Source: Octopus sinensis
Lineage: Eukaryota
Direction of reading: 5' to 3'
Length of the DNA: 64,000 bases
Assembly (NCBI RefSeq): GCF_006345805.1
Contig: NC_043012.1
Coordinates: 42,656,001-42,720,000 of the forward strand
Below the pieces are notes generated by a model, which was not told the DNA's origin, ran no database searches, and saw only the letters and a program-made list of their open reading frames with translations. A program made the translations under genes and the position numbers. Each line of letters begins with the position of its first letter. Positions within the stretch are counted from its first letter, which is position 1. Below, one piece after another: positions 18,992 through 39,338 of this stretch.

Positions 18992-19107
18992 CAATAGTTC
19001 CCTGCAATCCACTGTCTAGGATTTCAACCTCATAGTAATTTCTGTCTTGTGTGAGAGGATCAGCTGCTATATACACTCCTACTTTGTCTTCATCATTAAC
19101 AATGTAC
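18992..19107 (-). CDS. SPRYD3: SPRY domain-containing protein 3, coding exon 2 (S|YIVNDEDKVGVYIAADPLTQDRNYYEVEILDSGLQGTI|A)
   Basis: Acceptor cttttt ag| at 19108 and donor |gtgagg at 18991. 116 nt; phases match both neighbours. Resembles my recollection of SPRYD3 VGCYVASRPLTKDSNYFEVSIVDSG. Confidence 0.92.
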
Positions 19108-20150: not shown

Positions 20151-20953
20151 GTGCATTAAAACAATTTGTTGCTATTGTTAGTCAATTTGTAACCAGGGTA
20201 ATTTATTACCATCATCCATGTCAAATGTCATTCTTTAATCTGTTTGTTGTATCTGTTTTGGTTTTTAGTTTAAATTGGGTCAATAAGTGCATTAGAAATG
20301 TGATAAACAATGATTTGGAACAAAAATTGCTTGTAATCTGAAATTTTAATGTCTCAATGCTATTAATAGTTTAGTTGTTATTTTGTGTTCTTGTTATATT
20401 TCAAAATAAAGTGGTTAAAATAAATTTTGGTTAGTTTAGTATTATATAACCATCTATATTCTATACATGTCATTTTACATGCATTTCTTTATTTTGATGT
20501 GTTGAGCAAAATGAAAGCAAAGGACTGAAGAAAAATTTTTGTATTGGGTTGTCAGATAAATTTGTTTTATTTTTTGTACATTTATTTTTATCTTTTCTAA
20601 TAATGGTTGAATTAACATGAAAAATATTTTTACCATAGTATTTTCTGCATTGTTCTTTTTTTTTGTAGCTTTGTTCTTCTTCTACAACTTTTCTTTTTTG
20701 CTTTTGAAATTTGAATAAATTTTACCTCCTTTCATACATATGATGATGGAATGCCAAGTAAAATGAAAAAAAAAATTCTCACACCTTAACATCAACAGAA
20801 AGAGAAAGTTTGTATATCCAAGTCACTTCAAGACCCTGTTTAAGCATCATTTAATAACTTGCTGGCATTCTGACTTGGATACAGATGACAAATTGATCAA
20901 GCAGCAAATTAACCTACAATGAAATATTGCTTCCACATCTATTGCTTCCACAT

Positions 20954-23378
20954 ATAGCCTGGTCACCCGTATAGTCAACCAGGTGATACACGAAGGAGTC
21001 ATACCCAATGACTGGTGTAGCAGCACACTAGTCAACTGCTACAAAGGTAAAGGTGATGCCCTAGATACAAATAATTACAGAGGTATCGAGCTGTTGGATC
21101 AAGTAATGAAGGTTACGGAGAGGGTCATAGCCCAACTAATTAGAGAGAGAGTTAGTTTAGATGAGATGCAGTTTGGGTTCGTGCCAGGGAAAAGTACCAC
21201 TGATGCTATATTCCTAGTAAGGCAGCTGCAGGAGAAATACCTAGCCAAAGATAAGCCCTTGTACCTGGCTTTTGTTGACATGGAGAAAGCTTTTGATAGG
21301 GTCCCCCGATCCCTTATCTGGTGGTCAATGAGGAAACTGGGGATAGATGAATGGCTGGTGAGGACTGTGCAAGCCATGTACAGAGATGCCGTAAGTAAGG
21401 TTAGGGTTGGCAACATGTACACAGAAGAATTCAAAGTAGAGGTTGGGGTCCACCAGGGTTCAGTACTCAGCCCCCTCCTATTTATCATAGTCCTCCAGGC
21501 AATTACGGAGGAATTCAAGACAGGTTGTCCCTGGGAGCTCCTCTACGCTGACGACCTTGCTCTTATTGCTGAGTCACTATCAGAGCTGGAGGAGAAGTTC
21601 CAGGTGTGGAAGGAGGGTTTAGAATCGAGGGGCCTTAGAGTCAACCTAGCTAAAACCAAAGTACTAATAAGTAGGAAGGTAGACAATCCACAAATGTCTT
21701 CAGGAAGATGGCCCTGCTCGATCTGTAGAAAAGGTGTAGGTAGAAACTCTATAAGATGTACCCAGTGTAAGCTATGGACACATAAGAGGTGCAGCAATGT
21801 CAAAGGTAGGCTAACTGGGAAGATAGTTTTTGTATGTGGCAAATGCTCTGGAGCATTAACCTCCGAAAATCTGCAGAAAATAACTTCCGTCACTTTCCAG
21901 GGGGAAAAACTAGAAGTAGTTGATAGCTTCCGTTATCTAGGTGACCAAGTCAGTAGTGGGGGTGGGTGCGCTGAAAGTGTAACTGCTAGAATAAGAATAG
22001 CCTGGGCAAAGTTTAGGGAGCTCTTACCTCTGCTGGTGACTAAAGGCCTCTCACTCAAAGTAAAAGGCAGACTGTATGATGCGTGTGTACGAACAGCCAT
22101 GCTACATGGCAGTGAAACATGGGCCGTGACTGCCGAGGACATGCGTAAGCTCATGAGGAATGAAGCCAGTATGCTCCGATGGATGTGTAATGTCAGTGTA
22201 CATACTCGACAGAGCGTTAGCACCTTGAGAGAAATGTTGTACCTAAGAGGCATCAGTTGTGGTGTGCAAGAGAGACGATTGCGCTGGTATGGTCATGTGG
22301 TGAGAATGGATGAAGATAGGTGTGTGAGAAAGTGCCAATCCTTAGCAGTTGAGGGAACCCGTGGAAGAGGTAGACCCAGGAAAACCTGGGACGAGGTGGT
22401 GAAGCACGACCTTCGAACTTTAGGCCTCACTGAGGAAATGACCAGCGACCGAGACCTTTGGAAATATTCTGTACGTGAGAAGACCAGGCAGGACAAGTGA
22501 GCCCAGCCCACTTATGAATGCCTTTCCTCCCTTGGACACAAAGACCTGTTGAGGCAAGCGAAGTCGATATAGAACCTCATCCGACGACAGGCACCCATGC
22601 CAACCCCCTTTGCTTGCGAAGACATGTTGGGGCAAGCGAAATCGAAAAATCAAATTGAACCAGCCAGGATCCCTGGTCTGGTGGTACGTAAAAAGCACTA
22701 TCCGACTCGTGGCCGATGCCAGCGCCGCCTCCACTGGCTTCCGTGCCGGTGGCACGTAAAATACACCAATCTGACCGTACGACAGGCACCCATGCCAACC
22801 CCCTTGCTTGCGAAGACATGTTGGGGCAAGTGAAATCGAATTGAACCAGCCAGGATCCCTGGTCTGGTGGTACGTAAAAAGCACTATCCGACTCGTCGCC
22901 GATGCCAGCGCCACCTCCACTGGCTTCCGTGCCGGTGGCACGTAAAATACACCAATCTGACCGTACGACAGGCACCCATGCCAACCCCCTTTGCTTGCGA
23001 AGACATGTTGGGGCAAGCGAAATCGAAATCGAATTGAACCAGCCAGGATCCATGGTCTGGTGGTACGTAAAAAGCACTATCCGACTCGTGGCCGATGCCA
23101 GCACCCCCTCGTTTGGCTTCCGTGCAGGTGTCACATAAAATACACCAATCCGACCGTGGCCGTTGCCAGCCTCGCCTGGCACCTGTGCAGGTGGCACGTA
23201 AAAAGCACCCACTACACTCACGGAGTGGTTGGCGTTAGGAAGGGCATCCAGCTGTAGAAACACTGCCAGATAAGACTGGAGCCTGGTGCAGCCTTCTGGC
23301 TTTCCAGATCCCCGGTCGAACCGTCCAACCCATGCTAGCATGGAGAACGGACGTTAAACGATGATGATGATGATGATG
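20954..23378 (+). mobile_element. young RTE LINE (PHD family), 5'-truncated, with tandem-repeat 3' UTR and (GAT)n tail
   Basis: Uninterrupted RT ORF; ~190-bp 3' UTR units at 22584, 22781 and 22967. Confidence 0.95.
20983..22500 (+). CDS. RTE ORF2 reverse transcriptase (505 aa, 5'-truncated) with internal C4HC3 PHD-like finger
   Basis: [46 protein letters not shown]; CSIC-x10-CTQC-x4-H-x2-C-x14-CGKC. Confidence 0.92.
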   Translation: MIHEGVIPNDWCSSTLVNCYKGKGDALDTNNYRGIELLDQVMKVTERVIAQLIRERVSLDEMQFGFVPGKSTTDAIFLVRQLQEKYLAKDKPLYLAFVDMEKAFDRVPRSLIWWSMRKLGIDEWLVRTVQAMYRDAVSKVRVGNMYTEEFKVEVGVHQGSVLSPLLFIIVLQAITEEFKTGCPWELLYADDLALIAESLSELEEKFQVWKEGLESRGLRVNLAKTKVLISRKVDNPQMSSGRWPCSICRKGVGRNSIRCTQCKLWTHKRCSNVKGRLTGKIVFVCGKCSGALTSENLQKITSVTFQGEKLEVVDSFRYLGDQVSSGGGCAESVTARIRIAWAKFRELLPLLVTKGLSLKVKGRLYDACVRTAMLHGSETWAVTAEDMRKLMRNEASMLRWMCNVSVHTRQSVSTLREMLYLRGISCGVQERRLRWYGHVVRMDEDRCVRKCQSLAVEGTRGRGRPRKTWDEVVKHDLRTLGLTEEMTSDRDLWKYSVREKTRQDK

Positions 23379-24539
23379 ATCTGAAATGGTGCAGCTACTA
23401 CACATACAGACATCCTTGATCGCATCCAAAGGAAGGCTACATGATTGATTGGCACAAAGTCCTTGCTAATATACAGCAACTGCAGGTTCATAGACACCCC
23501 ATTTCCACACACAGCCTTTCTTTCTGTTACTACAGTGGCCTTTGCTTCTCAAAACTCAGTGGTTTTGTGTCACCTCCACTCAGGCCTCATTTGTCTTTCC
23601 TTCTAATGTCAGCCATATTGTATTTGCTCACCACTTTATGACCCTCGCGAACCCTTCTTCCCATTTCCTTATCCAGTTTTCCCAGTTCACTAAAATACCT
23701 TCCCTGCCCAATTTTATCTGCAGTTGTTCAAGAGAAATATCAACTGCATCAATCTCACTGGTTTTGTCTGAAGAAAGGGGCAGATAAAAAACATCATAAC
23801 ACATAAACCCTCATACTCACATAGTTATTGGGTGTAAAAAGTTCAAAAACATTTTTAAACATATATTTAGAAAATGGAGACTATATACAAAACTATGAAA
23901 AAGATATTTTCCACTAAAATGATGTTTTGATAAGATAAGGTCAGAAAAATCAAAGAGTTTTTGACAAAGGAATAGTAGGTTACAGGTTGTTTACAGAGTT
24001 GCCGCCACTGACAAAAATATGGTGCAAAGGTGGAAGGAGTTTAAAGCAGGAGAGGAGGGGGAACTAGCATTTAAGAAAAACTACATACAAAAATAAATCA
24101 TTAACTGCAACCACTAACACAGATCAGCAGTGAGCAGATGAACTGTTTTGTGGACAGACAAATCACAATCTGAGAGCTTCCTGTATAACTAGACTGCAGT
24201 CATAATGCATTACAAAAGATGATGGAAGACTTTAGGTATAGTTAAGTGCTACCAACTATTTTTCCATGCTCAACTGGGTAGGGTGGAATTTATTGAGGCA
24301 GAGTTTCTATGGCCAAATGCACTTCCTGTTACCAACACTCATCTCTTTCCAAGTGATATTTCCCCATGGCCAGATGTGTTTATGGAAATCTGGGAATGGA
24401 GGACATTATTTGTATGAATGTGATGATTGTTTAGAACTATCACATGATGCCAAGACAAGGAGACAGTAACACACATGCATACATATACATGCACACACAC
24501 ACACACACACATCTATAAACATGGTGGTTGTCTACTCTT

Positions 24540-26620
24540 TATGCAGAGTTTGACCACCTCTTGTACCTACACCTTAGATTCATCATAGCATCTGATGTGG
24601 CTTTTTAAACCAGACAATGTATTGAAAAGACACTCACGTAGATAGCATATCCAATTTGGACCACCAAGAGCTGCAGTTAGGTTCTGATCTTTGTGTATCT
24701 TAAAATGTCTTTTGAGGCCTCCATTAGAACTGCAGACCTTGTGGCATACACGGCATTGAAAGGTGTGCACAGAGAAATAGGCAGAATAGTTGGTGGAGGT
24801 TCATTTTTCATGAGTCCTCAAATGAGATTTGAGCCCAGCAAAAGAAAGGTATGGTCTCTCACAAACTGTGCACACAAACAGGTCACTGAGATTCACCTTC
24901 TTGATCACAACATTCTTCCTTAAATCTCTCTTGAATTTTGCATGTGTTATCCTGACCTCCTCAAATGCTTTCACTCCACTCCACACTTTTGTTTGCCATA
25001 CAGCTCGATCCGAAACAAGGGTTTCTATGGGCTTTGGATCCATTCTAAGTGACTTCATGGTAGTCCTTATGCCGTCCTTAAACCTCTTTTTAGGTTTACA
25101 CTGATTGTCTTTTCCCTCTGCAAACTTGCCATAAAACAGATGTTTGGGTGTGCGTTCATCCACCATTTGAACAATATGGCCAGACCATTTCATTTCATTT
25201 TTCAGAAACATTGATTTAATTGTAGTGATGCCTTCAGATGCAAAGACATCTGTGTTCGGAGTAAAAAAGCCCCATTTAATGTTTTAAGTTTGGCAAAAGC
25301 ATTTTTGGTGGAATCATTCTAACAATTTGCAATGTCTTTCATATCATGTTCATATTTCAGAAGAATACAACAGGGTTGGTAAGACAAACGACTGATAGAA
25401 AGCCAATTTTGTGTTGTTATTTATATGCCATTGGCACCAAACGCATGATTCCAAACCACCAAATGCTTGTACTGCCCTTTGAATTCACAGATGTATTTCT
25501 GTGTATAGATTTCCATCATTTTATACAGTTCTTCCAAGGTAAATGAAAGAGTCAACAACCTCAAGTAACTTACCCATAATGAAAATTTTAGTGGGGTTGT
25601 AAACAGCACCACATGCCGGCTGAAACAATGCAACTGTTTCTTTTAAGTTGATGGTCAAGTCAAAGTCATCACAAGCTGTGTCAGATGCAGATACAAGAAA
25701 TTGCAGGCCCATTTCAGAGTGACTGATTAGATCGCAGTCATCAGCATTTAAGAGTTCCCTAATGAGTGAAGTAAAAACTTTCATTTTGAATTTCAGTCTG
25801 GTCAGATTAAAACATTCCCTGTTGCTCAATATTTTACATACATACCCTCCTTGGAGATTTGAAAAGCATGTGATAGCACAACAGCAAAGTATATTGCTAA
25901 GAGGGTGTGTGCATCAAGGTTTCCTTGTTTTACTCCATTTTCCACAGCAAAAGATTCAGAAAGCCTACCACCAAAATTAACTCTAGCCTTCATATCTTGA
26001 TGCAAAGCCTTGATCATGTTCACAAATTTTTCTGGGCAACCTATTTTCCTTAGAATTAGCCACAGAGTATTTTCATTAACAGTATCAAATGCCTTGCTTA
26101 AATAAAAAAAAAGCAATGGTATAGGGCAAAATTCTGTTCAATGCATTTTTCCTGAAATTGTCTGACATTAAAGATACAATCAACTGTGTCTCTGGAAGAG
26201 CAAAAACCACATTGAGACTCAGACACTATATTTGGAACTATGAAGGTATTTAAATGTCCTAACAGAATGCAGGCAAGTACCTTTCCAACTACAGACAAAA
26301 GTGAAATCCCACAAAAATTACCACACAGATCCTTTGGTCCGATTTATACAAGGAGACTAAAATGGCATCAATCCAGTCTTGAGGAACTTCCTCAGTTCTT
26401 CAAAAGTGACAAATTAATATATTTAAGAGTTCAAACATTTTGTCATCCCTGTATTTCAAGACCTCTGCATAGATTCCACCAGACCCTGGAAACTTATTGT
26501 TATTCAGCTTATTCACAGCTAAACATATGCCATAACTGGAATGTTCGAATTTTTCTATCATCCTCATGTCAATGGAAAATGGTCTATTCAAAAGTGCAGT
26601 AAAATGTTCTACCCAGTGTT
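24540..26620 (-). mobile_element. RTE (BovB-like) LINE, decayed RT plus C-terminal C2H2 fingers
   Basis: SESQCGF, LSKAFDTV, GVKQG, LLNADDC, FIYLG, GHIVQMVDERTPK; CTVC...HLRTH and CRVC...HFKIH. Confidence 0.9.
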
Positions 26621-26951
26621 AATGAATATAAGTGGTGTTGGTTAAAGGCAAATATCCATTTGATGTCCTCACTGGAGCTACTGAAGAAGATTTTGGACCA
26701 TATACCGATGTAAACATTGGCAAAAACACACCTTTAGTTCATATACGTAATCTCTATCCTTATATATAATTTAAACATTAATTTTCTTCTATATTTAACA
26801 TTCACTAAAAATATCCTTCCTCTTTCTATAGGATACTTCTGACGTTATATCATATAACGTTTTTTCAAACACTATTAATAGCGTTCACTAAATCACTATA
26901 CATATCCATAATTTTCTGTTAAAATGTCTTATTGACGAGTTTTGTTTTTCC

Positions 26952-27038
26952 ACTTCCCTGAAGAGAAGATTGCATTGTTTTATACCATTTATTCTTCTGA
27001 ATAATATCAGTGAAATCTTCGAAACATGTGTCGAAAGT
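26952..27038 (+). ncRNA. type-I hammerhead ribozyme, long stem II (family 4)
   Basis: acttcc CUGAAGA GAAGAUU...AAUCUUC GAAA CAUGUG UC gaaagu; cleavage predicted after C27032. Confidence 0.8.
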
Positions 27039-27093
27039 AAAAATATTTGATTTATACCTGCGTTAAAATCCATCCACCCACCCACCCATCCAT

Positions 27094-27148
<55 letters not shown>

Positions 27149-27239
27149 CACTGCATCCTTGTTACATGAGAAAAGCCATTGCCAAGAAGACTTACTGAAA
27201 GGATTCATGTCTGTTGCCATGTGATGCCCTTATATGACT

Positions 27240-27960
27240 TTTAAACCCGGCCAACCTTTAAAACACATGAGAAACAGGTGCCACCATATGCACTCTCTTA
27301 ACCTGTCTTTTTAAACCTCCAACTGAGAGGCACACTTTTCCACATTTTACACATGTTTTGTTATGAATTTTAATATCTACATCATTGTTTATCATGGGTC
27401 AATCTCTATGAGAATTTTGATGGCTCACCAGGTATGCATGACTCAAATACCTCTGCCCACTAACCACACACATAAAAAGCAACACTCTCTCACTTTCCAC
27501 AGGTTCCCCACTTTTAAGCCCCTTCCTAATTCTCTCATACTTCACTCTCTCCCTCTCAAACCTTGAACAACCATCATGCACTATCTTTCTCCATCCATCA
27601 TGGTCTTGTGTCTCCCTCTCCCAATTACCAAGCTGCAATTCCTTTCTGTATTAGAGCATTTTTAAGGCAATCCATAAACCTTAGTTTAGGCTTATGCGCT
27701 GGTCTCCTACCATCTTCCAACTCACTGTACAATAGCTGTTTGGGCAGTCACTCATCACTCATCCTTACCAAATGTCCCCCCCCACACACACACACACACC
27801 TCAAACGTCTTTGCAAAATCATTGATTCTATACTTCTACAGTCACTCCTTTCAAGCACCTCCACATTACTAATGGCCATATTCCAGTTTATCCCCCCAAT
27901 TTTTCTCAGACAGTATTGATGAAATCATTCACATTGCCTTACCTTCCTACAGTAAACAAC
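27240..27960 (-). mobile_element. second RTE C2H2-tailed LINE 3' fragment
   Basis: GHLVRMSDE.LPKQLLYSEL...KPKLRF; degenerate C2H2 finger ending HQNSH. Confidence 0.8.
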
Positions 27961-28184
27961 TCATGCCTCACTTCCATGTGGCAAAGATGAGAGGACACTT
28001 GTGTTATATACCTTCACTTTAGTTTGTGAAGATATATTATGTTGTTTCCACAGACACCAATCAAGACTACCAAAAGCACTACTAATCCTGCTGATTTTAT
28101 GCTCGCCAGGCATCTATGAATATATGTATACATATATGGTCAGAGATTTAGGGACATCCTCATCAAGAAATTTGATGAGAGGGA

Positions 28185-30771
28185 GGAGGAGCTACAGACG
28201 TTGGACATAGAAGGGAGCTGGAAATTCCTACAGGACAGCTTGCTGAGTATCACAGACCAAGTCTGTGGATGGTGCAAAGCCTCTTCCAGACCTAGAGTTA
28301 CGTGGTGGTGGAATAGTACAATAGACAAAGCCATTAGAGCAAAGAAACAGGCCTGGAAAGCCTGGAGGGATGGGAGTAGCAGGGAACTGTACCAGGTAGC
28401 CAAAAGGGAGGCTGGGCAGCAGGTATACATAGCCAAGGGTGAAGCAGAAAAGAAGAAGACTGCTAATGTCCAGCGATGTGAGGACCAAAGAACTGAGGTA
28501 TTTCGAATTGCAAGACAGTGTGTGAGAGAAAATTGTGATGTCACAAGAGAGAAATGTGTCCGCATGGATGATGGTGCACTTGCTTTCAATGTTTCTGTAA
28601 AGAAAGAGGCTTGGAGAAGCCATTATGAGAGACTGCTGAATGTGGAGAATGAATGGGAGGAGGAGAGCCTGCCAAATGTTGACCCAGTAGAGGGACCAGC
28701 TATCCGAATAGACAGCTCCCTAGTAGTTAAAGCAATTAAGGGTATGAAGCCAGGAAAAGCCCCCGGCCCATCAGGAATCACTGCTGAGATGCTTAAAGCA
28801 TCTGGTGGTGTGGGCTATGGCCTAGTCACCCGCATTGTAAACCAGGTAGTTCAAAATGGAGTCATACCCAATGACTGGCGTAACAGCACCATAGTCAACT
28901 GCTACAAGGGTAAAGGTGATGCTCTGGATAGAAATAACTACAAGGGTATTAAACTGTTGGATCAGGTGATGAAGGTCACAGAGAGGGTCATAGCCCATCT
29001 CATTAGGGAGAGAGTTTGCTTAGATGAGATGCAGTTTGGTTTTGTGCCGGGTAGAAGCACCACTGATGCCCTATTCCTGGTTCAAAAACTGCAGGAGAAA
29101 TACCTAGCTAAAGGTAAACCCCTATACTTAGCTTTTGTGGACTTGGAGAAAGCCTTTGACAGAGTCCCCCAATCCCTTATCTGGTGGGCGATGCAAAAAC
29201 TGGAGATTGATAAATGGTTAATAAGGGCTGTACGGGCCCTATACAGAGAGGCCGTTAGTAAGGTTAGGATTGGCAACGAGTATAGTGAAGAATTCCGGGT
29301 AGAAGTAGGGGTCTACCAAGGTTCAGCCCTTAGTCCCCTTCTATTCATCATAGTCCTCCAGGCAATAACAGAGGAATTCAAGATGGGTTGCCCCTGGGAG
29401 TTCCTCTATGCTGATGACCTGGCCCTCATAGCAGAATCACTACAGGAACTAGAAAAGAAATTTCAGGTGTGGAAGCTAGGTTTAGAATCAAAAGGCCTTA
29501 GAGTCAATGTAGCAATGACCAAAGTTCTAGTAAGTAGGAAGGCAAACACACCACACACCCCTTCAGATAGGTGGCCCTGCTCGATCTGTAGAAAAGGTGT
29601 AGATAGAAACTCCATAAGATGTACCCAGTGTAAACTATGGACACGTAAGAGGTGCAGCACCATCAAAGGAAAATTAACCGAGAAGATAGCTTTCGTGTGC
29701 GGCAGATGCACAGGTGCAATAGACACCATTGATACTCAGAAAACAGATTCCATTACACTCCTGGGGGAGAAACTAGAAGTAGTTGATAGTTTCCGCTACC
29801 TAGGTGACCAAGTTATTAGTGGGGGTGGATGCTCAGAGAGTGTTACCACTAGATTAAGAATATCCTGCGCAAAGTTTACAAAGCTTCTACCCCTATTGGT
29901 GACAAAGGGTCTCTTGCTCAGAGTGAAAGGTAGATTTTACGATGCATGTATGCAAACTGCCATGCTTCACAGCAGTGAAACATGGGCCGTGACCATGGAG
30001 GACATGTGTAGGCTCAAAAGAATTGAAGCTAGCATGATCCACTGGATGTGTAATGTCAGTGTGCACATATGACAGAGTGTAAGCACCCTGAGAGACATGT
30101 TGGACATAAAAAGCATTAGATGTGGCGTGCAAGAGAGACGTTTACTACAGATGGATGAGGAGAGATGTGTGAAGAAGTGCCACTCCCAAACAGTTGAAGG
30201 AATCTGGAGTAGAGGTAGACCCAGGAAGACATGGGATGAGGTGGTCAAATATTTCCTTCAAATGTTGGGCCTCACAGAGGCAATGACGAAAGACTGAGAC
30301 CCCTGGATATATGCTGCGACTGCGAAGACCTGGCAAATAAAGTGAGTTCACGGCTGTATCCTACACCAGTTTCTCATAACCAGCCCCAGCCCATTCAAAA
30401 GTACCTTGGATTGTAGGGCGACTTGCTGTGCTTACCTTGGATCATAGGGCGAACTGCTGTGCTTGAGGAGAACTATTGAGTCAAGTACATCAACATCAAA
30501 ATAAAAATCAAATGGAAATTGTAGTTGTGATACCTGTGCCAGTGGCATGTAAAAAGCACCATCCAAACATGGCCAATGCCAGCGCTGCCTTGACTGACTT
30601 CTGTGCCAGTGGCACGTAAAAAGTACCCACTACACTCACGGAGTGGTCGGCGTTAGGAAGGGCATCCAGCTCAAACTGGAGCCTGGTGCAGCCTCCTGGC
30701 TTCCCAGACCCCAGTCAAACCGTCCAACCGGTGCTATCATGGAAAACAGATAGTTAAACGATGATGATGAT

Positions 30772-30772
<1 letters not shown>
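28185..30772 (+). mobile_element. RTE LINE (PHD family, second subfamily), 623-aa open frame 28201-30072, (GAT)n tail
   Basis: Linker, RT and PHD motifs; terminal module. Confidence 0.95.
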
Positions 30773-30799
<27 letters not shown>

Positions 30800-30810
<11 letters not shown>

Positions 30811-31560
30811 ATTATTGGTGAATTGAAGAAATGGAGCTGAACGCAGATTGAACAGAAATCGTTTTATTTCATTCTACACGTGTTTCGAAAGGCACAAATT
30901 ACCAAAATCCGATTGAATAATGGGACCATATTGTGTCTTTCTCTTCAGGAAGAAAATAGGAAATCCGTTGGAAAAACAAAAACAGAACAGAGGCGGAGCA
31001 AAAACAAATCGAACTATGCTCCTAAGAGCCCATGGCGAAACTGTTTATCAGTGTATGTTGAGAACCGGTGGCTGAAGAATTCAACGGGTCAGGCATCGGT
31101 CAATCATGTGGGTGAGGGTGTGTAGATGTTCTTTGTGACCGAGAATAAAGTTCTGACTATTTAAGGAATATTGGATGTTTTATAAGGGGCGAGAAAAAAT
31201 CTACTTAGAGACGTGTGTGTGTGTATACTGTTCTATATATGTGTGTGTTGGCGTAGGGGTAGAAAACATTTTTTGTGTACGTGTGTGCGTTTGATCGTTC
31301 GGCTGTCAGTGGCTACTGCCGTGAGAACCGTTGGGTGGCAGAAAAAAAATATATATATATTATGTTTTATGTGTGTGTGTGTTCATGTAAGCCTGCCTTG
31401 TCAAGGAAACCCCCCGCTGTGAAAAAACCAAGCCCCGTTTGTCTTACAGGAGTAATTCCCCTTGCAGTGGTTAATCGTAGATATCTTAAAGGCTATTTCA
31501 GAATTTGTTACCAAGGGCTATGGGTGCCGGTATTATTTATAAATTATAAAATTATTAAAT
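30800..31560 (-). mobile_element. PLE-derived-like element ending in (TA)n and containing an HHR
   Basis: HHR lies ~65 nt from the (TA)n at its 3' end; boundaries approximate. Confidence 0.5.
30865..30958 (-). ncRNA. type-I hammerhead ribozyme with intact core (family 4), sense to the SPRYD3 intron
   Basis: uauuuucuuc CUGAAGA GAAAGACACAA...UUGUGCCUUUC GAAA CACGUG UA gaaugaaaua; stem I 9/10 bp, stem II 10/11 bp, palindromic stem III ACACGUGU. Confidence 0.88.
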
Positions 31561-31592
31561 TTATATAAAATTATAAAATTATAAAATTATTT

Positions 31593-31646
<54 letters not shown>

Positions 31647-31689
31647 TATGTGTGTGTGTGGTGTGTGTGTGTGTGTTGTCTGAGATGCC

Positions 31690-33260
31690 AGCAAGTTTGT
31701 TATCACAGATTGGTTGAAATGAGGTTAAATTGTAGTTATTCCTCAGCTTTGTCACATCCACTTTTTGAATTGGTCAAGTGCAATTGTTACGAATAAGACT
31801 GCAGATAGTAAAATTCACCTTTGATTGTATCAATCTATGGTCAGAACAATACTCCTCAATGGAGAAAGGACATGTTACTTGGACACCTTCCCTCATGGAA
31901 GACTTCACAATTATGTAATCAATGAGGTAATAATGGATGGATTGGGGATGCTTCCAAGTAGTCTTGTGGTGGTTGGGGAGTTGGAAAATAGTATAGATAA
32001 GTGATAGCAGCAGATAGCCATTTGCGTTTGCTTTGCCAACCCCATGCTTCCCTATTACATCACCCCATATGAATGAATCACAAACTATGCGTGCATTGAA
32101 ATCACTAAGCAGATGAAATTCACCAGTGATGGGACACATCTCAACTAGCAACATAGTTCAAAGCAGAACTGCTCTTTGACTACTTTGTTTGAGTTCATGG
32201 TTGGAGCATAGCAACGGAAAATAGTTGCATATTTATTTTTACTAAAGCAGATACGCAATGAGCCTTTCACTAATGCTAACTGGCAGAGATGTAAGACATT
32301 TCACCAGGTCATTCTTAATAGCAAACCCAACACCTACCACTTTCTTTACTTCCTGAGGCTTACCCATCCAGAAAAAAGTGTATCCACGATCCACTTCTTG
32401 TAACTGACCACAGTCCACTAGTCTGGTCTCTGAAAGAGCTGCTATTCCAATATTTTTTTTACTTTTTTTCAAGACACAGCAACCAAAGCAGTCCTACATT
32501 CTATGTTTTTCTTGCTCTTCTGAAAAGTTCACACATTCCAAGATGCAATGAAAAAGTATTCTGTTCTCAATTTGCTTAATCTTCTGGTACGGGTTTGGAT
32601 ACCCAGTCATTTGCACCTAATGACAAGGAGCATATGCAAGTAAGCAATTTTTAGGTCATATTTTCTTCACCCCCTCTTCCACAGGAGGAAAGAAGTGCCA
32701 TCCTAAATAGGGTTGCTTTGTTGTGAAAGGAAAACATGAATTACATAATTACTTGTAGATGTTGTGTAAAACAGCCATCTACCTTTCACCACCTATGTGC
32801 GAAGTTCAAGCTCAGAACTTCCAGTGATATCCTTCACCTGTTCCCACTGCTATCCCTTCTGTCATAGGATTTTTTGTTGGGGAGGTGGGGCACAAAACAT
32901 GTTGGTGATATTTGCTGATGGTATTTTACTGAACCATCTGCACATGGTTTTGTTAACAGTGGTCATTGCTTGTGCAGCACAATGCACACTCTCTCAATCA
33001 AACAAGCATTTTATTGTACTGGTGCACGGTGTGCCACGTGTCAGATGCTAGATTGATCACAGATTTGAGATCAGGGTGGCCTTCTCCTAATCTAGTTGCT
33101 TTAAAGCTACAGAGCCCAGACTGCCCAATGAATAAGTAGATGTCGATAGTGAACACCAGCTAAAGGGACTGTCAGCAACCACAAACCTGGTTTTGTATCA
33201 GAGTATTCCTTCTCGCAGATGAGCTGCCGTCACCACAGCTAAGGAGCCCCACCTGCCCCA
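31690..33260 (-). mobile_element. RTE LINE 5' part: 5' UTR and AP endonuclease (possibly the 5' end of 24540-26620)
   Basis: IAALSETRL, GVGFAIK, DFNARI, GKANANG, TTWKHP, IDYIIV, SDHRLI. Confidence 0.88.
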
Positions 33261-33529
33261 TACATATATACACATAGAAAGAGTAAAAAATACGAGACTT
33301 AAGAATATCAATAAGATATATAAAAACAATATATACATATGTATATATATACACATACACACACACACATCTGATGATATGAGGTTCTTGAAGGAACCCA
33401 CCCAATGAAATTGGGTTCTGGGAGCACTGTGTATTCCACCCACACGTAACAATAAAGCTTTTCATACACCCTACCCCAAGAAACCAAATTACAATTCCTT
33501 CCCTCTTTCTCACTTTCCATTTTTCATGC

Positions 33530-35741
33530 TTTATCATCATCATCATCATCATCATTATCATCTGATGTCCATTTTCCGTACTGGCATGGGTTGGACAGTT
33601 TGACAGCAGCTGGCTAAGCAGAAGACTGCACTGGGCTTCACTGTCTGTTTTGGCAGGATTTTTATGACTGTATACCCTTCCTAACACACACCACCTAACA
33701 GAGTGGACTGGGTGATTTTTACGTGGTACCAGCACCGTTGAGGTTTGTTTTGACACAGTTTTAACAGTTGGATGCCTTTACAAATGCCAACCACTTTACA
33801 GTGTGGACTGGGTGCACCAGCACTGGCAGGGTCACCAACTAACTTGCAAGACAAAGATCCTTTGAGAGTGGTGGGGGGACATTAGAGGTGGTGGCTTTGT
33901 GTCAGGTGATGAGAGGATAGAGTGTGACAGAGGAATAGAAAAAGGCGTCTTGCAGTAGAGGAGATACATGGTTGCCCAGCCAGTGGGAGAGACCAAAAGT
34001 GAGTGAGTGAGTGTGAGAGAGAGAGAGAGAGAATGATAAGAATGAGAGTGGAAGTGAACAAAAGGAAGAAAGTGCAAAAGAGAGCAGGAGAAAGATGGTG
34101 GTGAAGTGCCAGGGCAAACCATCAAGGTAGGGGGATCAGAATATAAATGGGGTGATAGAGTATTGCCAAAGGTGCATGAGTAGGGAGCAGGGACTTCACA
34201 TGTATGCAAATAGTATGGGAGTGGTGAATGCAGTGACAGGTGAAATGTAGGTATATAAGGAAGGTGGGGTTCAAAAGGATAGCAATGATATAGTGAGCGG
34301 GGCAGTGAGAACAGGATTAGGGAGTGAAATATCAGCATAGACATGATGCATGAAAAAGAGGAAATGTGAGGAAGAGATGTAGTTTGGTTTGTTGGGGTAG
34401 GGTGTGAAAAATAAAAAAAAATTTTTTGTTGTTACAAATGAGTGGAACACAGTACTCTCAGAACTCAGTCTTACTGAGGTAGGCAGGTCTTCTCAAGAAC
34501 CTCATATCACTAGACATCACAGTCCATTATCATCTCCTCCATGAGGCCCAACATCCTGAGATCGGTCCTCATCCTATGTCTTCCTGAGTTTCCCTCTTCT
34601 ACAGGTGCCATCAACTGTCAGTGATCAGCACTTCTTCATACAGCTGTCTACATTCATATGCATCACATGTCCAAACCAACATAGTCTTCTCCTTTCCTTA
34701 CAGCATCTGATTCCTCTTATGCCCATTTTTTTCTCTCAGCACATTTGCACTTTGTCATACATACACACTAATGTTGCACATTCAGCAGAGCAAACTAACT
34801 TCATTCCTCTCCAGTCTATACATGTCTTCTGCATTCAGAGCCCATATCTCACTACCATTTGTACATAAGCATCATACAATCTGCCTTTCACTCAGAGAGA
34901 GAGAGTCCTTTTGTTGCCAACAGAGGTAATAGTTCTCTGAACTTCCTCCATTCTATTCTTATTCTAAAACAATACTTTCAGAACATCCTCAACCATTGCT
35001 AATTTGGTCACCTAGGTAATCGAAACTATTTGCAACCTCAAGAGAGCTGCCTGGACATTTGAGAGAGTCTAATTCTCATGTGTCCTATGTGCGTATTGTT
35101 CTTGTACGTCTACACACAAAGATGACATTTTCTTCAATTCCATGCACCTCTTATACATCTATAGATTACACTGGGTGCAGTGAATAGAATTACTTCCAAC
35201 TCCTTTCCTACATATTGAGCAAGGCCATTTACCTGACGGAAAGAGAGTCTTGTCTACTTTCTTGCTAATAACAACTTTGGTCTTCACTGGTGATATGTGA
35301 GTATATAGGGGAGGCCCTTTGATTCCAGGTTTTGCTTCCATACTTGAAATTTCTTTCCCAATTCTGTTTCAGATTCTGCAATAAGAGAAAGGTCATCATA
35401 ATATAGTAGTTCCCATGAGCAGCCTATGTTGAATTACTCTGTTATAGTCTGGAGGATTATGATAAGAGTAGAACTGAGAACTAAGCCCTGGTGAACCCCT
35501 ACATGTACACTAAATTCATCACTGTATTCATGGTCAACTCTCACCCTACTGATAGCACTGTTGTACATGGCTTGTACAGCTCTAACAAGCCACTTCTCTA
35601 CTCCTAACTTCCTTAGAGAACACCAGATAACAGAGCAAGGAACTATGTCAAAAGCTTTTTCTAGGTTGACAAAAGTCACATACAATGGCTTACTTTTGGC
35701 CATATAATTCTCTTGAAGTTGTCTCACTAGGAAGATGGCAT
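33530..35741 (-). mobile_element. decayed RTE LINE (PHD family) with long 3' UTR and (GAT)n tail
   Basis: TDAIFLVRQLQENY, LEKAFD, GVHQG, SGKWPCSIC. Confidence 0.85.
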
Positions 35742-35912
35742 CTGTGGGACGAAGTTAAAATAATAGACAGAGAACACCACTGGAAAATATGAAAACTAAA
35801 AGCAGCAGCACATATGCTAGGACATGACAACCTCCTAAGCAGACCGAATGCAGATATGAACAGCATATGGGAACCGGTATTAGGGAAGGATAGGAAAATA
35901 TTAGATTTATAA
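35742..35912 (+). pseudogene. Penelope-like GIY-YIG C-terminus
   Basis: LWDEVKIIDREHHWKI*KLKAAAHMLGHDNLLSRPNADMNSIWEPVL...*; fits the PLE pattern W..VKI.D.E..W..R.LKEA.H...L. Confidence 0.7.
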
Positions 35913-35941
35913 GCCCTAAAATTCACTCCATAATTGCCCAC

Positions 35942-36042
35942 AGGCATGTGGCGTAGTGGTTAAGAGCGCAGGCTACTAACCCCAAGATTCCAAGTTCGAT
36001 TCCAGACCTGAATAATAATAATAATAATAATCGAAAAATACC
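35942..36042 (+). mobile_element. tRNA-like head of the HHR-SINE family (A box TGGCGTAGTGG, B box AGTTCGATTCC, (AAT)n), 3'-truncated
   Basis: Homologous to 14150-14270 and 50720-50875. Confidence 0.85.
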
Positions 36043-36139
36043 TGCTCCAGCATGGCCATAGTCACATGACTGAAACAAGTAAAACAATTAAAAACTAAGC
36101 TGTTATAATCCCGAGCAACACCAGGTATCTCAGCTAGTT

Positions 36140-36730
36140 TTGTTAATATACAGGAATGCATATTAGCATCTTTTCTTGCAGTTAACCTTTGAACAAAATT
36201 TGGACATTTGAATAAATCTGGGGTTAATTCAGTTAATTTGAATTTTTTACACTCTCTGTTAATGACCCCAGCATAAGAGATAAAATCTTCATTTTCTTTT
36301 TTAACTAAATTTAAACTGTGCCAATGAGTATTGAACAGGGAACTTCTCTTACTGAAAATTCTCGATAATCAATTGTTTCATCAAAACAAGTCTCACCTGT
36401 TTCTTTGGCAGAATATAATTACAGCATTTTTCATGTTCAGTGGGAGATAACTTCCTTATAAGTAGTTCCACCTTCTTCTTGTCATTCCAATTTTTACATT
36501 CTTCTTTGAAAATTTCTTCATATCTCCTAAAATATGCAGAAAAAGTAGTACCTTCTTCCAGGTTATAAATAAATTCTCCAATTGAGTTAGCTACGCCGTC
36601 TGATGAGAACACACCTGAAGTATTTTCAGACTTCTTCAACATTACTTCCAGTAACTGTTGGCATTGTGGTTGTTGTTGTAACTGCTACTGTTGTTGCTGT
36701 TGCAACTGCACCACGCAAGCCAATAAGTTA
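36140..36730 (-). mobile_element. Gypsy family A gag fragment (second copy)
   Basis: FSAYFRRYEEIF...LLIRKLSPTEHEK; homologous to 45980-46250 plus 47040-47370. Confidence 0.85.
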
Positions 36731-38027
36731 CTTTATCTGTGGACGCATCAGATTCTGCAATTGGCGCTGTCTTGCAGCACACCGTAGATGGTGAAACTAA
36801 ACCTTTGGCTTTCTTTTCTTGCCAGCTGCAGCCTGCTGAACGCAGATATAGTACTTTTGATCGTGAGTTACTAGTGATCTGTCAGTTCGGCATTTTCAGC
36901 ATCAGCTTGAGGGACGAGAGTTTGTGACTTATACTGATTACAAGCCCCTTACGTTTGCACTATCTTCTAAAACGGATAAACTCTCCCCTCGTACTTTCCG
37001 TCACCTGGATTATATTTCTCAGTTTACAAGTGACATTCGACATGTGCCAGGGAAAGAGGACGTTCCAGCTGATGCTCTCTCTAGGCTCCCTGTCAATTCC
37101 ATTTCCTCTCCTGCAGCAATTGACTTAACTGCTATTTCGCAGGATCAACCACCTTTAGCGGAGTTGAATTTAACTTCGCCCAAGTTTATCAATTGTAAGT
37201 TTGCTTACCGTCTGCTCCCTTCAGCAGAAGGCTCTATTCTTTGTGACGTCTCCACTGGTTCTCCTAGGCAGTTAGTACCTGAGAAACATCAACGTTCTGT
37301 TTTTGATGCTCTTCATTCATTGTCACATCCGGGTATCTCTGCCACAGTAAAGCTTGTTACTGCTCAGTTCTTCTGGCCCAATATGTCTTTGGCATCATTA
37401 CCCAGACACATGTTTTTGTTCGTGATGATTCTGTCAAAGGACCTCTTGTTTCTCCTTATAAAGGACCTTTTCATGTGATTTCCCACACGCCGAAAGTGTT
37501 CAAACTTGACATTAATGGTCGTTCGGTGACCGTTTCTGTAGATCGTCTTAAAAGGGCATATTTTGAATTGTCAACATCTTTTGATGACACCGCTGCTACA
37601 ACCATCGTTGAACCTTCATATGCACTTTTGACAACACCACCATTTACACATGCACCTTTGACAACACCACCATTTACACATGCACCTTTATCAACACCAA
37701 CATCGGCAACATCACTTTCATCGTCGCAGCCCGCCTCAAACAAACCTATGTTTCGAGGTCAGGCAGAACTGTTCACTGGCCAAAGAAACTTTCAAAGACT
37801 ATTTATATTTGACATTCTCAATTGTGTTCCCAGTGACAGTTACGAGACTTATTGAACTTTGTTCATTTGAGTATTTTTTTTTCCTTTTGGTGCATTCTTA
37901 TTTATATTGTAAATTTTGTTTTGATTTGTCATATTGTGTGCCATTTTGGTGATTTGGTAACCACCTTATTTTCTGAAGCCACTACAAGGAATTTTGTTTC
38001 GTGCTTTTGCACTCGAGGGGGAGCCTT

Positions 38028-38535
38028 TGTAGTGACGTCATTTTCCAGTGTGCGCACACGCAACGTCATTCTTCAGTGTGCATGTGCGGAACGTCATTCT
38101 TCAGTGTGCGTGTGCAGGGCTGGAACCTTCTGGAAAAGCCTAAGGAAGTTCCCTCTTGCACATGCGCAAGAGACTGGGGAAGAAAATTCTATCGCGTTCC
38201 TTGTTAGCGTCGTTGACTTGAGACATGGCTATTGAAGAGAAAGGACATGTTAAACGTGTGATCAGCCTATTCTCCTGTCCCAGACGCTTAGGATTTGACC
38301 TGCTCTGTTGCTGCTGAATTTGTTGTAAGAATCTTACAAATGTTAAAGTTCAGCCTTGCTATATCGAACCAAGTGGATACCAATATACCAACGTACTTCT
38401 TTTGTAAATAAGAAAATAAAGAGTTATATATATTTTTAAGGTTGCGTTCTTGTTCCTGACTGGTAGTTTCTGGAAATTAAAGAAAGGAAATTGGTTGCAC
38501 CCAAACAGTGTAAAGAATTAACCAGTTCCATTACA
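38028..38535 (+). repeat. single LTR of Gypsy B (508 bp)
   Basis: TGTAGTG...CATTACA termini; PPT GAGGGGGAG at 38015-38023; three ~28-bp internal repeats; AATAAA at 38415-38420. Confidence 0.85.
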
Positions 38536-38536
38536 G

Positions 38537-38548
38537 TGGTGACCCTGA
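38537..38548 (+). promoter_or_regulatory. primer-binding site, tRNA-Trp type
   Basis: TGGTGACCCTGA versus the complement of the tRNA-Trp 3' end, TGGTGACCCCGA (from memory). Confidence 0.75.
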
Positions 38549-39338
38549 GTTCTGGTCATAGACCATAGAACACTTAACTAAGATCTAGTTTCTACCGAGT
38601 CTGAACCAATTAGTCAACCAAAATCTCCGCCACAGTCATCATCCTCTTTGCTTCAATTTTATCGTCGTTTTGTCATAGACACAGAGCGTAGCCAAACATA
38701 TTATGAAGACGCTATTGTAAACCAACGACAGACATAACGTCACAACCAACATTGTCTCCATCTACAAAAATTCAAGTGTACACAAGATACAGATTCTACT
38801 CATGCTGTAGTGTGAAAATCTCACCACGGAAGAACAGTTGCAGTATATATATCTGGAAGAATAGCTATATCAAGAGAAAAATATGCACAACAAGTGACTC
38901 AACTAATCTCAGCTCCGAGACACTAATCTTGTATAGAACTCATTATCGTGTACTACATGAACTGGTAAAATAACTCTAACTTCATTTAAACACAAAATGT
39001 TGAGATTTCTCTCATGCTCTGTTGTATTTGCATAAACATTATTTCTGTACATCTGATGCACATAAAAAAAAAAAAAATTTTGTTTCAGACGCGATGAAGG
39101 TTGGTAAAGATTAAAAAAAAGAATTTTTTTTCTCTGTGCATACAGCACAAAAAGAAAAAGAAAAAACACATTTTTTTTTGGTAAAATTTACACGTAAAAA
39201 AAATTTATTGGTTCAATTGCTGGTCTTGTTTAATTTCTATTTCTTTCTGTTCTTTTTTCCATTTGCGTCAGTTCAACTTTTCGTTGTCATTTCCCTTTCC
39301 TTTGACAGAGTCATCTATTTAAATTTAAAAAGAACAAC

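What the first reader, a model, noticed from the sequence alone, without database searches (positions are those of the whole stretch)
30865..30958. Apparently intact hammerhead ribozyme in sense orientation inside SPRYD3 intron
All core nucleotides are present (CUGAAGA, GAAA, UA), with a 10-bp stem I, an 11-bp stem II and a perfect 8-nt palindrome ACACGUGU as stem III, the form expected to need dimerisation. Being on the minus strand, it is transcribed in every SPRYD3 pre-mRNA and could cut the 30-kb intron between 30875 and 30874. By contrast, the other sense-strand HHR inside a confirmed intron (14.0 kb) has a mutated core.
Basis: partly seen in the sequence, partly recalled or inferred. Interest (0 to 1): 0.7.

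Follow-up and report, generated by a model that had tools for sequence, protein, structure and literature searches.

The report
Transposon-borne hammerhead ribozyme motif in SPRYD3 intron
The hammerhead ribozyme motif is real and lies in the sense strand of the 29.7-kb first intron of an SPRYD3 gene, but it is one of two diverged copies of a short repeat that ends at a (TA)n microsatellite, so it is most likely a stranded retroelement ribozyme of a known kind rather than a device of the host gene.

Summary
On the minus strand, 30958..30865 carries every invariant hammerhead (HHR) core nucleotide in type I order. Helix I has 9 pairs plus one C·U mismatch. Helix II has 10 pairs plus one A·C mismatch and continues as a 55-nt rod. 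Helix III is the palindrome ACACGUGU, and the cleavage site falls between 30875 and 30874. None of 300 dinucleotide shuffles of the window gave such a motif.

The host gene is also confirmed. Three minus-strand exons with canonical splice sites match human SPRYD3 (PDB 2yyo, E=4e-25), and intron 1 (48812..19108, 29,705 nt) holds the motif in sense.

The motif is not unique. A second copy with the same architecture lies at 26948..27042 on the plus strand. The two copies share about 57% identity, yet all 13 core positions are identical and 5 helix pairs show compensatory changes. Both ~180-nt units end at a (TA)n run. This fits hammerheads carried by Penelope-like elements and retrozymes, which occur in thousands of mostly solo copies.

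No Rfam hammerhead model matches either copy. There is no tandem partner and no RT/GIY-YIG ORF nearby, and predicted folding disfavours the catalytic fold (about 0.2%).

Verdict: a new member of a known kind. Appreciable cutting of SPRYD3 pre-mRNA is possible but unsupported.

The parts
30865..30958 (-). Hammerhead motif, copy A (type I). Helix I 5' strand 30958-30949; CUGAAGA 30948-30942; helix II domain 30941-30887; GAAA 30886-30883; helix III palindrome ACACGUGU 30883-30876; A17 at 30875; predicted cleavage between 30875 and 30874; helix I 3' strand 30874-30865.
   Evidence: 0 of 300 shuffles; 102 bits with model R1, which was built from these same two copies, so it matches them by construction.
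30808..30990 (-). Repeat unit A that carries the hammerhead: about 32 nt upstream, the 94-nt motif, and about 57 nt downstream up to the (TA)n run.
   Evidence: BLAST and nhmmer homology to 26923-27093 only. The two units are 57% identical over 170 aligned positions.
30776..30807 (.). (TA)16 microsatellite at the 3' end of unit A. It is also the (GAT)n(TA)n tail of a plus-strand LINE that arrives from the other side.
26948..27042 (+). Hammerhead motif, copy B, with the same architecture. It is antisense to SPRYD3. CUGAAGA 26958-26964; helix II domain 26965-27020 (56 nt); GAAA 27021-27024; helix III ACAUGUGU 27024-27031; C17 at 27032; predicted cleavage between 27032 and 27033.
   Evidence: 103 bits with model R1, built from these same copies.
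26923..27093 (+). Repeat unit B.
27097..27144 (.). (TA)24 microsatellite at the 3' end of unit B, preceded by an AC-rich stretch (CCACCCACCCACCCAUCCAUCC).
48813..48927 (-). SPRYD3 orthologue, coding part of exon 1 (ATG at 48927; GTGAGT donor at 48812-48807).
19108..48812 (-). SPRYD3 intron 1, 29,705 nt. It contains both hammerhead copies and several LINE fragments.
18992..19107 (-). SPRYD3 exon 2 (AG acceptor at 19109-19108, GTGAGG donor at 18991).
   Evidence: (coding part identical in a Logan contig from another sample).
3765..3852 (-). SPRYD3 exon 3 (...QPGWNVDSIGYHADDGR). Intron 2 runs 18991-3853, 15,139 nt.
28201..30775 (+). Plus-strand LINE (RVT_1 ORF 28201-30072, then a repeated 3' UTR ending in (GAT)n) lying between the two hammerhead copies. 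It is context, not part of the ribozyme element.

Best explanation
The motif is a solo genomic copy of a short (~180 nt), hammerhead-bearing retroelement sequence. The kind is the one carried in the terminal repeats of Penelope-like elements (PLEs) and in their non-autonomous derivatives, the non-LTR retrozymes. Here 'hammerhead' means the type I self-cleaving RNA motif.

In the active element, the type I hammerhead with a short palindromic helix III is thought to process multimeric or tandem element transcripts, often by pairing two ribozymes through helix III. This copy was inserted at a (TA)n microsatellite inside SPRYD3 intron 1 and happens to lie in the sense orientation. It is therefore transcribed as part of the pre-mRNA. 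Without a tandem partner, with a weak A/U-rich helix I and with competing pairings, it is expected to cleave rarely or not at all, and it has no dedicated role for SPRYD3.

Shown:
- the motif, with its core and helices;
- the second copy, with core conservation and compensatory helix changes;
- the (TA)n ends of both units;
- the intron and the strand.

Inferred:
- the PLE or retrozyme origin;
- the low activity of this copy.
For: - The motif is real and is not due to chance.
- A second copy sits 3.8 kb away on the other strand. It was found independently by BLAST and nhmmer, and no further copy was found.
- The two copies are only 57% identical over the unit, yet 13 of 13 core positions are identical against 40 of 84 elsewhere in the motif (Fisher p=1.8e-4).
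- 89% of helix cells are paired, against 33-56% when the partners are slid. Five pairs have changes on both sides, against 0-1 in the slid controls. This points to selection on the ribozyme during the element's own diversification.
- Both helix II domains fold on their own into equivalent interrupted rods.
- Both units end 62-67 nt after the cleavage site at a (TA)16-24 run. (TA)n is a published preferred target of PLE clades, and PLE hammerheads lie near the element's 3' end (PMC8557442).
- The palindromic short helix III, the G10.1-C11.1 pair, the enlarged helix II and the mostly solo, heavily 5'-truncated copies match the published description of hammerheads in metazoan PLEs (PMC4209133, PMC6765202).
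- Against activity here: the catalytic fold has a predicted fraction of 0.16% and the core pairs elsewhere; the antisense copy B lies in the same transcript and could form a duplex of about -90 kcal/mol with unit A.
Against: - No PLE reverse transcriptase or GIY-YIG endonuclease was found in the window or within 1.25 kb upstream of either copy. The neighbours are LINE fragments.
- There is no tandem array, which is the retrozyme hallmark.
- Two published traits of the minimal PLE hammerheads are absent: the unpaired nucleotide between A9 and 10.1, and the short 4-5 bp helix I. The 55-nt helix II is far longer than the 6-8 bp described.
- With only two copies, the covariation evidence is thin (26 of 500 shuffles reach the observed number of both-sided changes).
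- No related sequence from any other genome could be retrieved, so family size and the autonomous partner are unknown.
- The (TA)n at copy A is shared with a LINE tail.
- Low activity is a prediction and has not been measured. Some invertebrate retrozyme hammerheads with the same 2-bp helix III cleave as monomers at 0.1-0.8 per min (PMC7229834).
Confidence: 0.7

Rival explanations
1. One reading: the motif is an active intronic ribozyme that self-cleaves SPRYD3 pre-mRNA between 30875 and 30874, either as a monomer or by trans-dimerisation through ACACGUGU. Cleavage would compete with splicing of the 29.7-kb intron and lower or tune SPRYD3 output.
For: - The core is intact and the motif is in sense orientation inside intron 1.
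- The homodimer minimum-free-energy structure does form the 8-bp intermolecular helix III (-44.9 against 2 x -16.3 kcal/mol).
- The 3' splice site lies 11.8 kb downstream, so there would be minutes for cleavage before exon 2 is made (inference from coordinates).
- Precedents exist: domesticated type I hammerheads in amniote introns (PMC6155905), and the intronic CPEB3 ribozyme, whose half-life matches the polymerase transit time to the next exon (PMC10919898).
- Mussel and coral retrozyme hammerheads with a 2-bp helix III cleave as monomers (PMC7229834).
Against: - The conservation is explained by membership of a repeat family.
- No sense partner exists in the window, and a single-copy pre-mRNA is too dilute for bimolecular pairing (inference).
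- Folding disfavours helix I and sequesters the core.
- Neither copy matches any Rfam hammerhead model, even at E<=10.
- The 10-12 bp helix II excludes the canonical loop 1-loop 2 geometry, which needs 6 bp and 4 bp helices (PMC4209133).
- PLE hammerheads cleave poorly in vitro, and no RNA-seq ends were seen at the site in Anolis (PMC4209133, PMC11167929).
Confidence: 0.12
2. The unit is a hammerhead-bearing short element that is not related to PLEs. Examples would be a SINE-like element, or a 3'-tail module mobilised by the abundant LINEs of this genome, as the Sm-alpha SINE-like elements of schistosomes carry hammerheads.
For: - No PLE ORF was found anywhere in the window, whereas LINE RT/EN fragments are everywhere.
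- The LINE family next to copy A also ends at (GAT)n(TA)n, so (TA)n ends are not specific to PLEs in this genome.
- The unit is very short (~180 nt).
Against: - No tRNA-like or Pol III head was seen in the ~32 nt upstream of the motif (by eye; one search shows no Rfam hit).
- The unit shares no sequence with the LINE 3' ends.
- The palindromic short helix III is the published signature of PLE and retrozyme hammerheads (PMC4209133, PMC6765202, bioRxiv 10.64898/2026.07.22.740005).
Confidence: 0.15
3. The motif is a chance match to the hammerhead consensus in AT-rich intronic DNA.
For: - No Rfam hammerhead hit.
- The fold energy is not better than shuffles (z=-0.75 and +0.57).
Against: - 0 of 300 shuffles gave a hit.
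- A second homologous copy has an identical core and compensatory helix changes.
- Matches to the core boxes alone in metagenome contigs never had the helices.
Confidence: 0.01

Closest known systems
Minimal or atypical type I hammerheads in the pseudo-LTRs of metazoan Penelope-like elements (Cervera & de la Pena 2014, PMC4209133; Lunse et al. 2017, as summarised in PMC6765202)
   Same: Type I topology; full core; G10.1-C11.1; enlarged helix II; very short helix III with palindromic sequence allowing a double-hammerhead dimer; highly variable copies with compensatory changes; most copies solo and 5'-truncated; position near the element's 3' end; (TA)n target (PMC8557442).
   Different: Helix II is a 55-56-nt interrupted rod rather than 6-8 bp. 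There is no unpaired nucleotide between A9 and 10.1. Helix I spans 10 positions rather than 4-5 bp. No RT/GIY-YIG ORF is nearby.
Naiad PLE 3'-UTR 'HHR_half_core' cases (Craig et al. 2021, PMC8557442)
   Same: The two halves of the hammerhead core are separated by an unusually long spacer (35-50 nt reported; 55-56 nt here). The motif lies near the element's 3' end, and (TA)n is the preferred target.
   Different: Those cases were reported as not fitting hammerhead stem descriptors, whereas here all three helices can be drawn. I could not compare sequences because the supplement is not held.
Non-LTR retrozymes of animals and newt/axolotl satellite hammerheads (PMC7229834; bioRxiv 10.64898/2026.07.22.740005)
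   Same: Type I hammerhead with 1-2 bp helix III and a palindromic tetraloop; low GC; unit size in the 170-400 nt range; monomeric dispersed copies occur and are common in introns (44% of Xenopus copies overlap introns); dimer-dependent cleavage in amphibians.
   Different: No tandem repeat here, and no canonical loop 1-loop 2 contacts.
Domesticated intronic hammerheads of amniotes (RECK, CTCL, DTNB introns; PMC6155905) and the intronic CPEB3 HDV-like ribozyme (PMC10919898)
   Same: A self-cleaving motif in the sense strand of a large intron of a protein-coding gene, probably derived from a retroelement.
   Different: Those are single-copy, deeply conserved at orthologous sites and active as monomers, with tertiary contacts. 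Here the motif is a member of a repeat family, orthologous conservation is untested, and the predicted fold is poor.

Membership tests
Hammerhead ribozyme, type I | Invariant core: C3 U4 G5 A6 N7 G8 A9, G12 A13 A14, A15.1-U16.1, H17 (not G) | tested here: met
   CUGAAGA ... GAAA ... U-A in the correct order in copy A. Copy B has the same with C17.
Hammerhead ribozyme, type I | Three helices around the core, with helix I open | tested here: met
   Helix I pairs 9 of 10 positions, helix II 10 of 11 plus a distal hairpin, and helix III is 2 bp as a monomer or 8 bp as a dimer. Across both copies 89% of cells are paired, against 33-56% in slid controls.
Hammerhead ribozyme, type I | Recognised by curated covariance models (Rfam Hammerhead families) | tested here: not met
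   No hammerhead hit at gathering score on the whole window, nor at E<=10 on 801 nt and 301 nt around the two copies. The likely causes are the 55-nt helix II and the loopless helix III.
Hammerhead ribozyme, type I | Site-specific self-cleavage giving 2',3'-cyclic phosphate and 5'-OH ends | not testable with these tools
   This needs in vitro transcription or RNA end mapping. Thermodynamic prediction gives the catalytic fold 0.16% of the ensemble.
Hammerhead ribozyme, type I | Helix I-helix II tertiary contact that supports activity at physiological Mg2+ | tested here: inconclusive
   The canonical geometry (6-bp helix I, 4-bp helix II) is absent. Both copies have internal mismatches in helices I and II, but their positions are not conserved.
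PLE-associated hammerhead (min-HHR and variants) | Very short or absent helix III with palindromic 15.2-16.2 and loop, permitting dimerisation | tested here: met
   ACACGUGU is a perfect palindrome. ACAUGUGU in copy B still pairs with itself through two G·U pairs.
PLE-associated hammerhead (min-HHR and variants) | Lies in the pseudo-LTR flanking an RT-GIY-YIG ORF | tested here: not met
   No RVT or GIY-YIG match in any sense frame within 1.25 kb upstream of either copy. The window's ORFs are LINE, LTR-element and DNA-transposon types. Published surveys say most genomic copies are solo (PMC4209133), so this does not exclude a PLE origin.
PLE-associated hammerhead (min-HHR and variants) | Unpaired nucleotide between A9 and 10.1, and a short (4-5 bp) helix I | tested here: not met
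   G10.1 follows A9 directly and pairs with C11.1. Helix I spans 10 positions.
PLE-associated hammerhead (min-HHR and variants) | Multi-copy family whose copies differ by compensatory changes | tested here: met
   There are two copies in 64 kb with 5 both-sided pair changes (3 in helix II, 2 in helix I) and 13 of 13 core positions identical at 57% overall identity. The genome-wide copy number is unknown.
PLE-associated hammerhead (min-HHR and variants) | Element 3' end at a microsatellite target such as (TA)n | tested here: met
   (TA)16 and (TA)24 start 67 and 64 nt after the two cleavage sites. At copy A the run is shared with a LINE tail.
Non-LTR retrozyme | Head-to-tail tandem repeats of about 170-400 bp, each with a type I hammerhead | tested here: not met
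   There are only two copies, on opposite strands and 3.8 kb apart. No direct repeat of the unit was found.
Domesticated intronic hammerhead | Sense orientation in an intron of a protein-coding gene | tested here: met
   Exons at 48927-48813, 19107-18992 and 3852-3765 on the minus strand have GT-AG sites. The joined product matches SPRYD3 (2yyo_A, E=4e-25).
Domesticated intronic hammerhead | Conservation at the orthologous intron position across species | not testable with these tools
   Only a 1.4-kb contig around exon 2 from another sample could be retrieved. A homologue search with an ORF that overlaps the motif found nothing.

The most novel reading that the evidence does not exclude
The two copies define an undescribed hammerhead architecture: a 55-56-nt rod-like helix II with a conserved distal hairpin, invisible to Rfam models. 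It might be related to the 'half-core' motifs noted in Naiad PLE 3' UTRs. In this reading the architecture is catalytically competent, and the sense copy cleaves SPRYD3 intron 1 co-transcriptionally, either alone or by pairing through ACACGUGU with transcripts of other family members. That would make a transposon-derived throttle on SPRYD3 expression.
Probability: 0.07. Interest if true: 0.6.

Novelty: new member of a known kind. Interest (0 to 1): 0.25.

Why it matters
As it stands, this is one more example of hammerhead motifs scattered through invertebrate-type genomes by retroelements, and it shows that sequence reading alone can pick them up where Rfam models fail.

It would matter more in two cases. 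First, if the long-helix-II variant proved active, the descriptor space for hammerhead searches would widen, and the variant could link the 'half-core' motifs of Naiad PLEs to real ribozymes. Second, if the sense copy cleaved nascent SPRYD3 RNA, it would be an invertebrate counterpart of the amniote intronic hammerheads and of the CPEB3 ribozyme, and a test case for how cells tolerate self-cleaving RNAs inside long introns.

Tried and rejected
- Rfam scans: gathering score on the whole window, and E<=10 on 801 nt and 301 nt around the two copies. No hammerhead family was reported. Only microsatellite-driven miRNA noise and a sub-threshold snR75 hit appeared.
- Search for more copies in the window: BLAST, nhmmer with --max, descriptors allowing 1-2 core mismatches, and a covariance model (R1) run without filters. 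Nothing was found beyond the two copies. The next best model hits (19 bits at 1256-1327; a hairpin at 14152-14243 that hits on both strands) are not hammerheads.
- Relatives elsewhere: the first metagenome pattern scan gave 0 hits. The second gave 23 hits, all without helices, so they are chance matches.
- Protein-word searches: a search with exon 2 alone found nothing, and so did a search with the ORF overlapping the motif.
- A full HMMER search with the antisense translation of unit B gave one hit. It is a fibronectin-repeat receptor phosphatase and therefore spurious.
- An exact look-up of a window ORF found no record, so the organism was not identified. A paper search for SRR11869385 found nothing.
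- Pfam on the joined exons gave only a sub-threshold SPRY hit (E=0.011). The PDB sequence search settled the gene identity.
- Lunse et al. 2017, the 2010 EMBO Rep paper and the supplement of PMC8557442 are not held.

Full report
**1. The observation**

The minus strand from 30958 to 30865 reads UAUUUUCUUC CUGAAGA GAAAGACACAA(33 nt)UUGUGCCUUUC GAAA CACGUGU A | GAAUGAAAUA. Every invariant hammerhead position is present in type I order:
- C3 U4 G5 A6 (N7=A) G8 A9
- the G10.1-C11.1 pair
- G12 A13 A14
- the A15.1-U16.1 pair
- A17

- Helix I has 9 standard pairs plus one C·U mismatch.
- Helix II has 5+5 pairs around an A·C mismatch and continues into a distal hairpin, so the whole helix II domain is 55 nt.
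- Helix III is the perfect palindrome ACACGUGU. That gives 2 bp plus an ACGU loop in a monomer, or an 8-bp intermolecular helix in a dimer.

The motif is not a chance match. A descriptor that demands both core boxes, helix II, a palindromic helix III and helix I hits only this site in the 64-kb window and hits nothing in 300 dinucleotide shuffles. A looser version hits two real sites against a mean of 0.02 in shuffles. As a control, 23 exact matches to the two core boxes in public metagenome contigs all lacked the helices.

No Rfam hammerhead model matches either copy, at gathering score or at E<=10 on short stretches. The likely reasons are the 55-nt helix II and the loopless helix III.

**2. 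The gene context**

Three minus-strand exons have canonical splice sites:
- exon 1: ATG at 48927, GTGAGT donor at 48812
- exon 2: 19107-18992
- exon 3: 3852-3765

Joined, they encode a sequence whose best match among solved structures is human SPRY domain-containing protein 3 (2yyo_A, E=4e-25). The next best match is RanBP9/10 at about 1e-5. Pfam SPRY is only sub-threshold on this partial domain. A Logan contig from another sample carries an identical exon 2.

Intron 1 is therefore 48812..19108, 29,705 nt, and the motif lies inside it in the sense orientation.

**3. What the motif belongs to**

BLAST of the surrounding region against the window, a core-box scan, nhmmer and a covariance model all find one further copy and only one. 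It lies at 26948-27042 on the plus strand, 3.8 kb away and antisense to SPRYD3.

It has the same layout:
- CUGAAGA
- a 56-nt helix II domain of 7+5 pairs around a G·A mismatch, plus a distal hairpin
- GAAA
- ACAUGUGU, which is still self-complementary through two G·U pairs
- C17

The shared unit is about 180 nt: roughly 32 nt upstream, the ribozyme, and about 60 nt downstream. It is only 57% identical between the copies (97 of 170 aligned positions). Yet all 13 invariant core positions are identical, against 40 of 84 elsewhere in the motif (Fisher p=1.8e-4).

On the two-sequence alignment:
- 89% of helix cells are paired, against 33-56% when the 3' partners are slid.
- Five pairs changed on both sides while staying paired, three in helix II and two in helix I, against 0-1 in the slid controls.

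Two sequences are a thin basis, and 26 of 500 shuffles reach that count. Even so, the pattern is what is expected if the ribozyme was under selection while the element family diversified. It is not what is expected of a site maintained for SPRYD3.

Both units stop at a (TA)n run: (TA)16 at 30776-30807 and (TA)24 at 27097-27144, beginning 67 and 64 nt after the cleavage sites. With roughly 18 such runs outside the two large microsatellite blocks of the window, this coincidence is unlikely by chance (my estimate is about 4e-5).

At copy A the same (TA)n is also the end of the (GAT)n(TA)n tail of a plus-strand LINE. Its RVT_1 ORF is at 28201-30072, and its 3' end recurs five times in the window. 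(TA)n tracts therefore seem to be common landing sites for retroelements in this genome.

**4. Comparison with the literature**

- Metazoan Penelope-like elements (PLEs) carry type I hammerheads in their pseudo-LTRs. These have an enlarged helix II, a conserved G10.1-C11.1 pair and a minimal, palindromic helix III. They occur in thousands of highly variable copies full of compensatory changes, most of them solo remnants of truncated elements. They cleave poorly in vitro even as dimers (PMC4209133; summary in PMC6765202).
- PLE insertions are heavily 5'-truncated, the hammerhead lies near the 3' end, and (TA)n is a preferred target in several clades. In Naiad PLEs, 'half-core' motifs with the two core boxes 35-50 nt apart were noted in 3' UTRs (PMC8557442).
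- In a Poseidon PLE from Anolis, the hammerhead cleaved only in the presence of the element's protein, and no RNA-seq ends were found at the site (PMC11167929).
- Animal non-LTR retrozymes are tandem 170-400-nt repeats with type I hammerheads. They are now argued to derive from PLE pseudo-LTRs. Their dispersed monomers are common, and in Xenopus 44% of retrozyme copies overlap introns although they are depleted there relative to intron size (PMC7229834; bioRxiv 10.64898/2026.07.22.740005).

The present unit fits this kind in topology, helix III, copy behaviour, low GC and (TA)n ends. It differs in four ways:
- helix II is far longer;
- there is no unpaired base after A9;
- helix I is longer;
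- I found no reverse transcriptase or GIY-YIG endonuclease in the window or in any sense frame within 1.25 kb upstream of either copy, and no tandem array.

Membership of the PLE/retrozyme hammerhead kind is therefore the best-supported inference but is not demonstrated. A different short hammerhead-bearing element remains possible.

**5. Would it cut SPRYD3 pre-mRNA?**

The motif is transcribed with the intron, so cleavage cannot be excluded. A helix III of 2 bp plus a tetraloop is the usual form in invertebrate retrozyme hammerheads, and some of these cleave as monomers at 0.1-0.8 per min (PMC7229834).

Several observations argue against appreciable activity:
- The isolated 94-nt RNA is predicted to pair the 5' strand of helix I with the GAAGA of the core. 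The catalytic fold is 2.5 kcal/mol above the minimum and makes up about 0.16% of the ensemble.
- In the full 183-nt unit the core pairs with a downstream UUCUUC, and the fold is no more stable than shuffles.
- The dimer does form the 8-bp helix III in silico. But no second sense copy exists in the window, so dimerisation would have to be bimolecular. For a nascent pre-mRNA that requires transcripts of other family members.
- The antisense image of copy B is transcribed 3.8 kb later in the same RNA and could form a long imperfect duplex with unit A, about -90 kcal/mol.
- The long helix II rules out the canonical loop 1-loop 2 geometry.

The 3' splice site lies 11.8 kb downstream. Only a rate of the order of 0.1 per min or more would sever many transcripts before exon 2 is made. 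This is my inference from typical elongation rates; the CPEB3 ribozyme offers a precedent for this kind of kinetic competition (PMC10919898).

**6. Verdict**

The most likely identity is a stranded copy of a retroelement hammerhead, not a host regulatory ribozyme.

It is a new member of a known kind, with an unusually long helix II as its one structural oddity. Interest is low to moderate. The points worth following are a genome-wide census, orthologous-intron comparison, and a simple cleavage assay of monomer and dimer constructs.

Noticed in passing
window 30300-30807; also ends near 7735, 23380, 54397 and 63200: A plus-strand LINE family (RVT_1 ORFs at 20983-22500 and 28201-30072) has a repeated 3' UTR ending ...CATGGAAAACGGACGTTAAAC(GAT)n. 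In 4 of 5 copies this is followed directly by (TA)n. The 3' UTR itself contains internal 31- and 67-nt direct repeats.
   Followed up: partly
window 14152-14243: A near-perfect hairpin with ~27-nt arms (GTCACTGCCTGGAATCAAACTCGGAAT ... ATTCCGAGTTTGATTCCAGGCAGTGAC). It gave weak hits to my model on both strands. A related ORF text recurs near 50.6 kb, so it is probably part of another repeat. It is not a hammerhead.
   Followed up: partly
window 26919-27002 (+): A sub-threshold Rfam hit to the C/D-box snoRNA family snR75 (24.6 bits, E=0.0027, gathering score 40) overlaps the 5' half of hammerhead copy B. It looks like a chance match.
   Followed up: no
window 55407-55506: A run of 100 N, which is an assembly gap.
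   Followed up: no
window 56700-58710 and 60730-61280: Two large blocks of (TA)n-rich compound microsatellite. They hold about 37 of the window's 55 (TA)>=8 runs.
   Followed up: no
window 926-2366, 9828-10418, 16968-17998, 39339-41352: By eye from ORF translations: integrase-like and gag-pol-like ORFs of LTR elements, a PIF1-helicase-like fragment, and a Tc1/mariner-like transposase split over two ORFs. The SPRYD3 introns are largely made of transposon debris.
   Followed up: no
window 1256-1327 (+): The third-best hit of the hammerhead model (19 bits, E about 0.06): GUGAUGA ... UGAAG with a 7-bp helix II, so both core boxes are mutated. It lies inside an integrase-like ORF on the strand antisense to SPRYD3 and is probably chance.
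   Followed up: no
L001 (Logan SRR11869385 contig, 1416 nt): A contig from another sample carries SPRYD3 exon 2 with an identical coding sequence and similar but diverged flanking intron. A closely related genome therefore exists in public read archives and could be used for the orthology test.
   Followed up: partly
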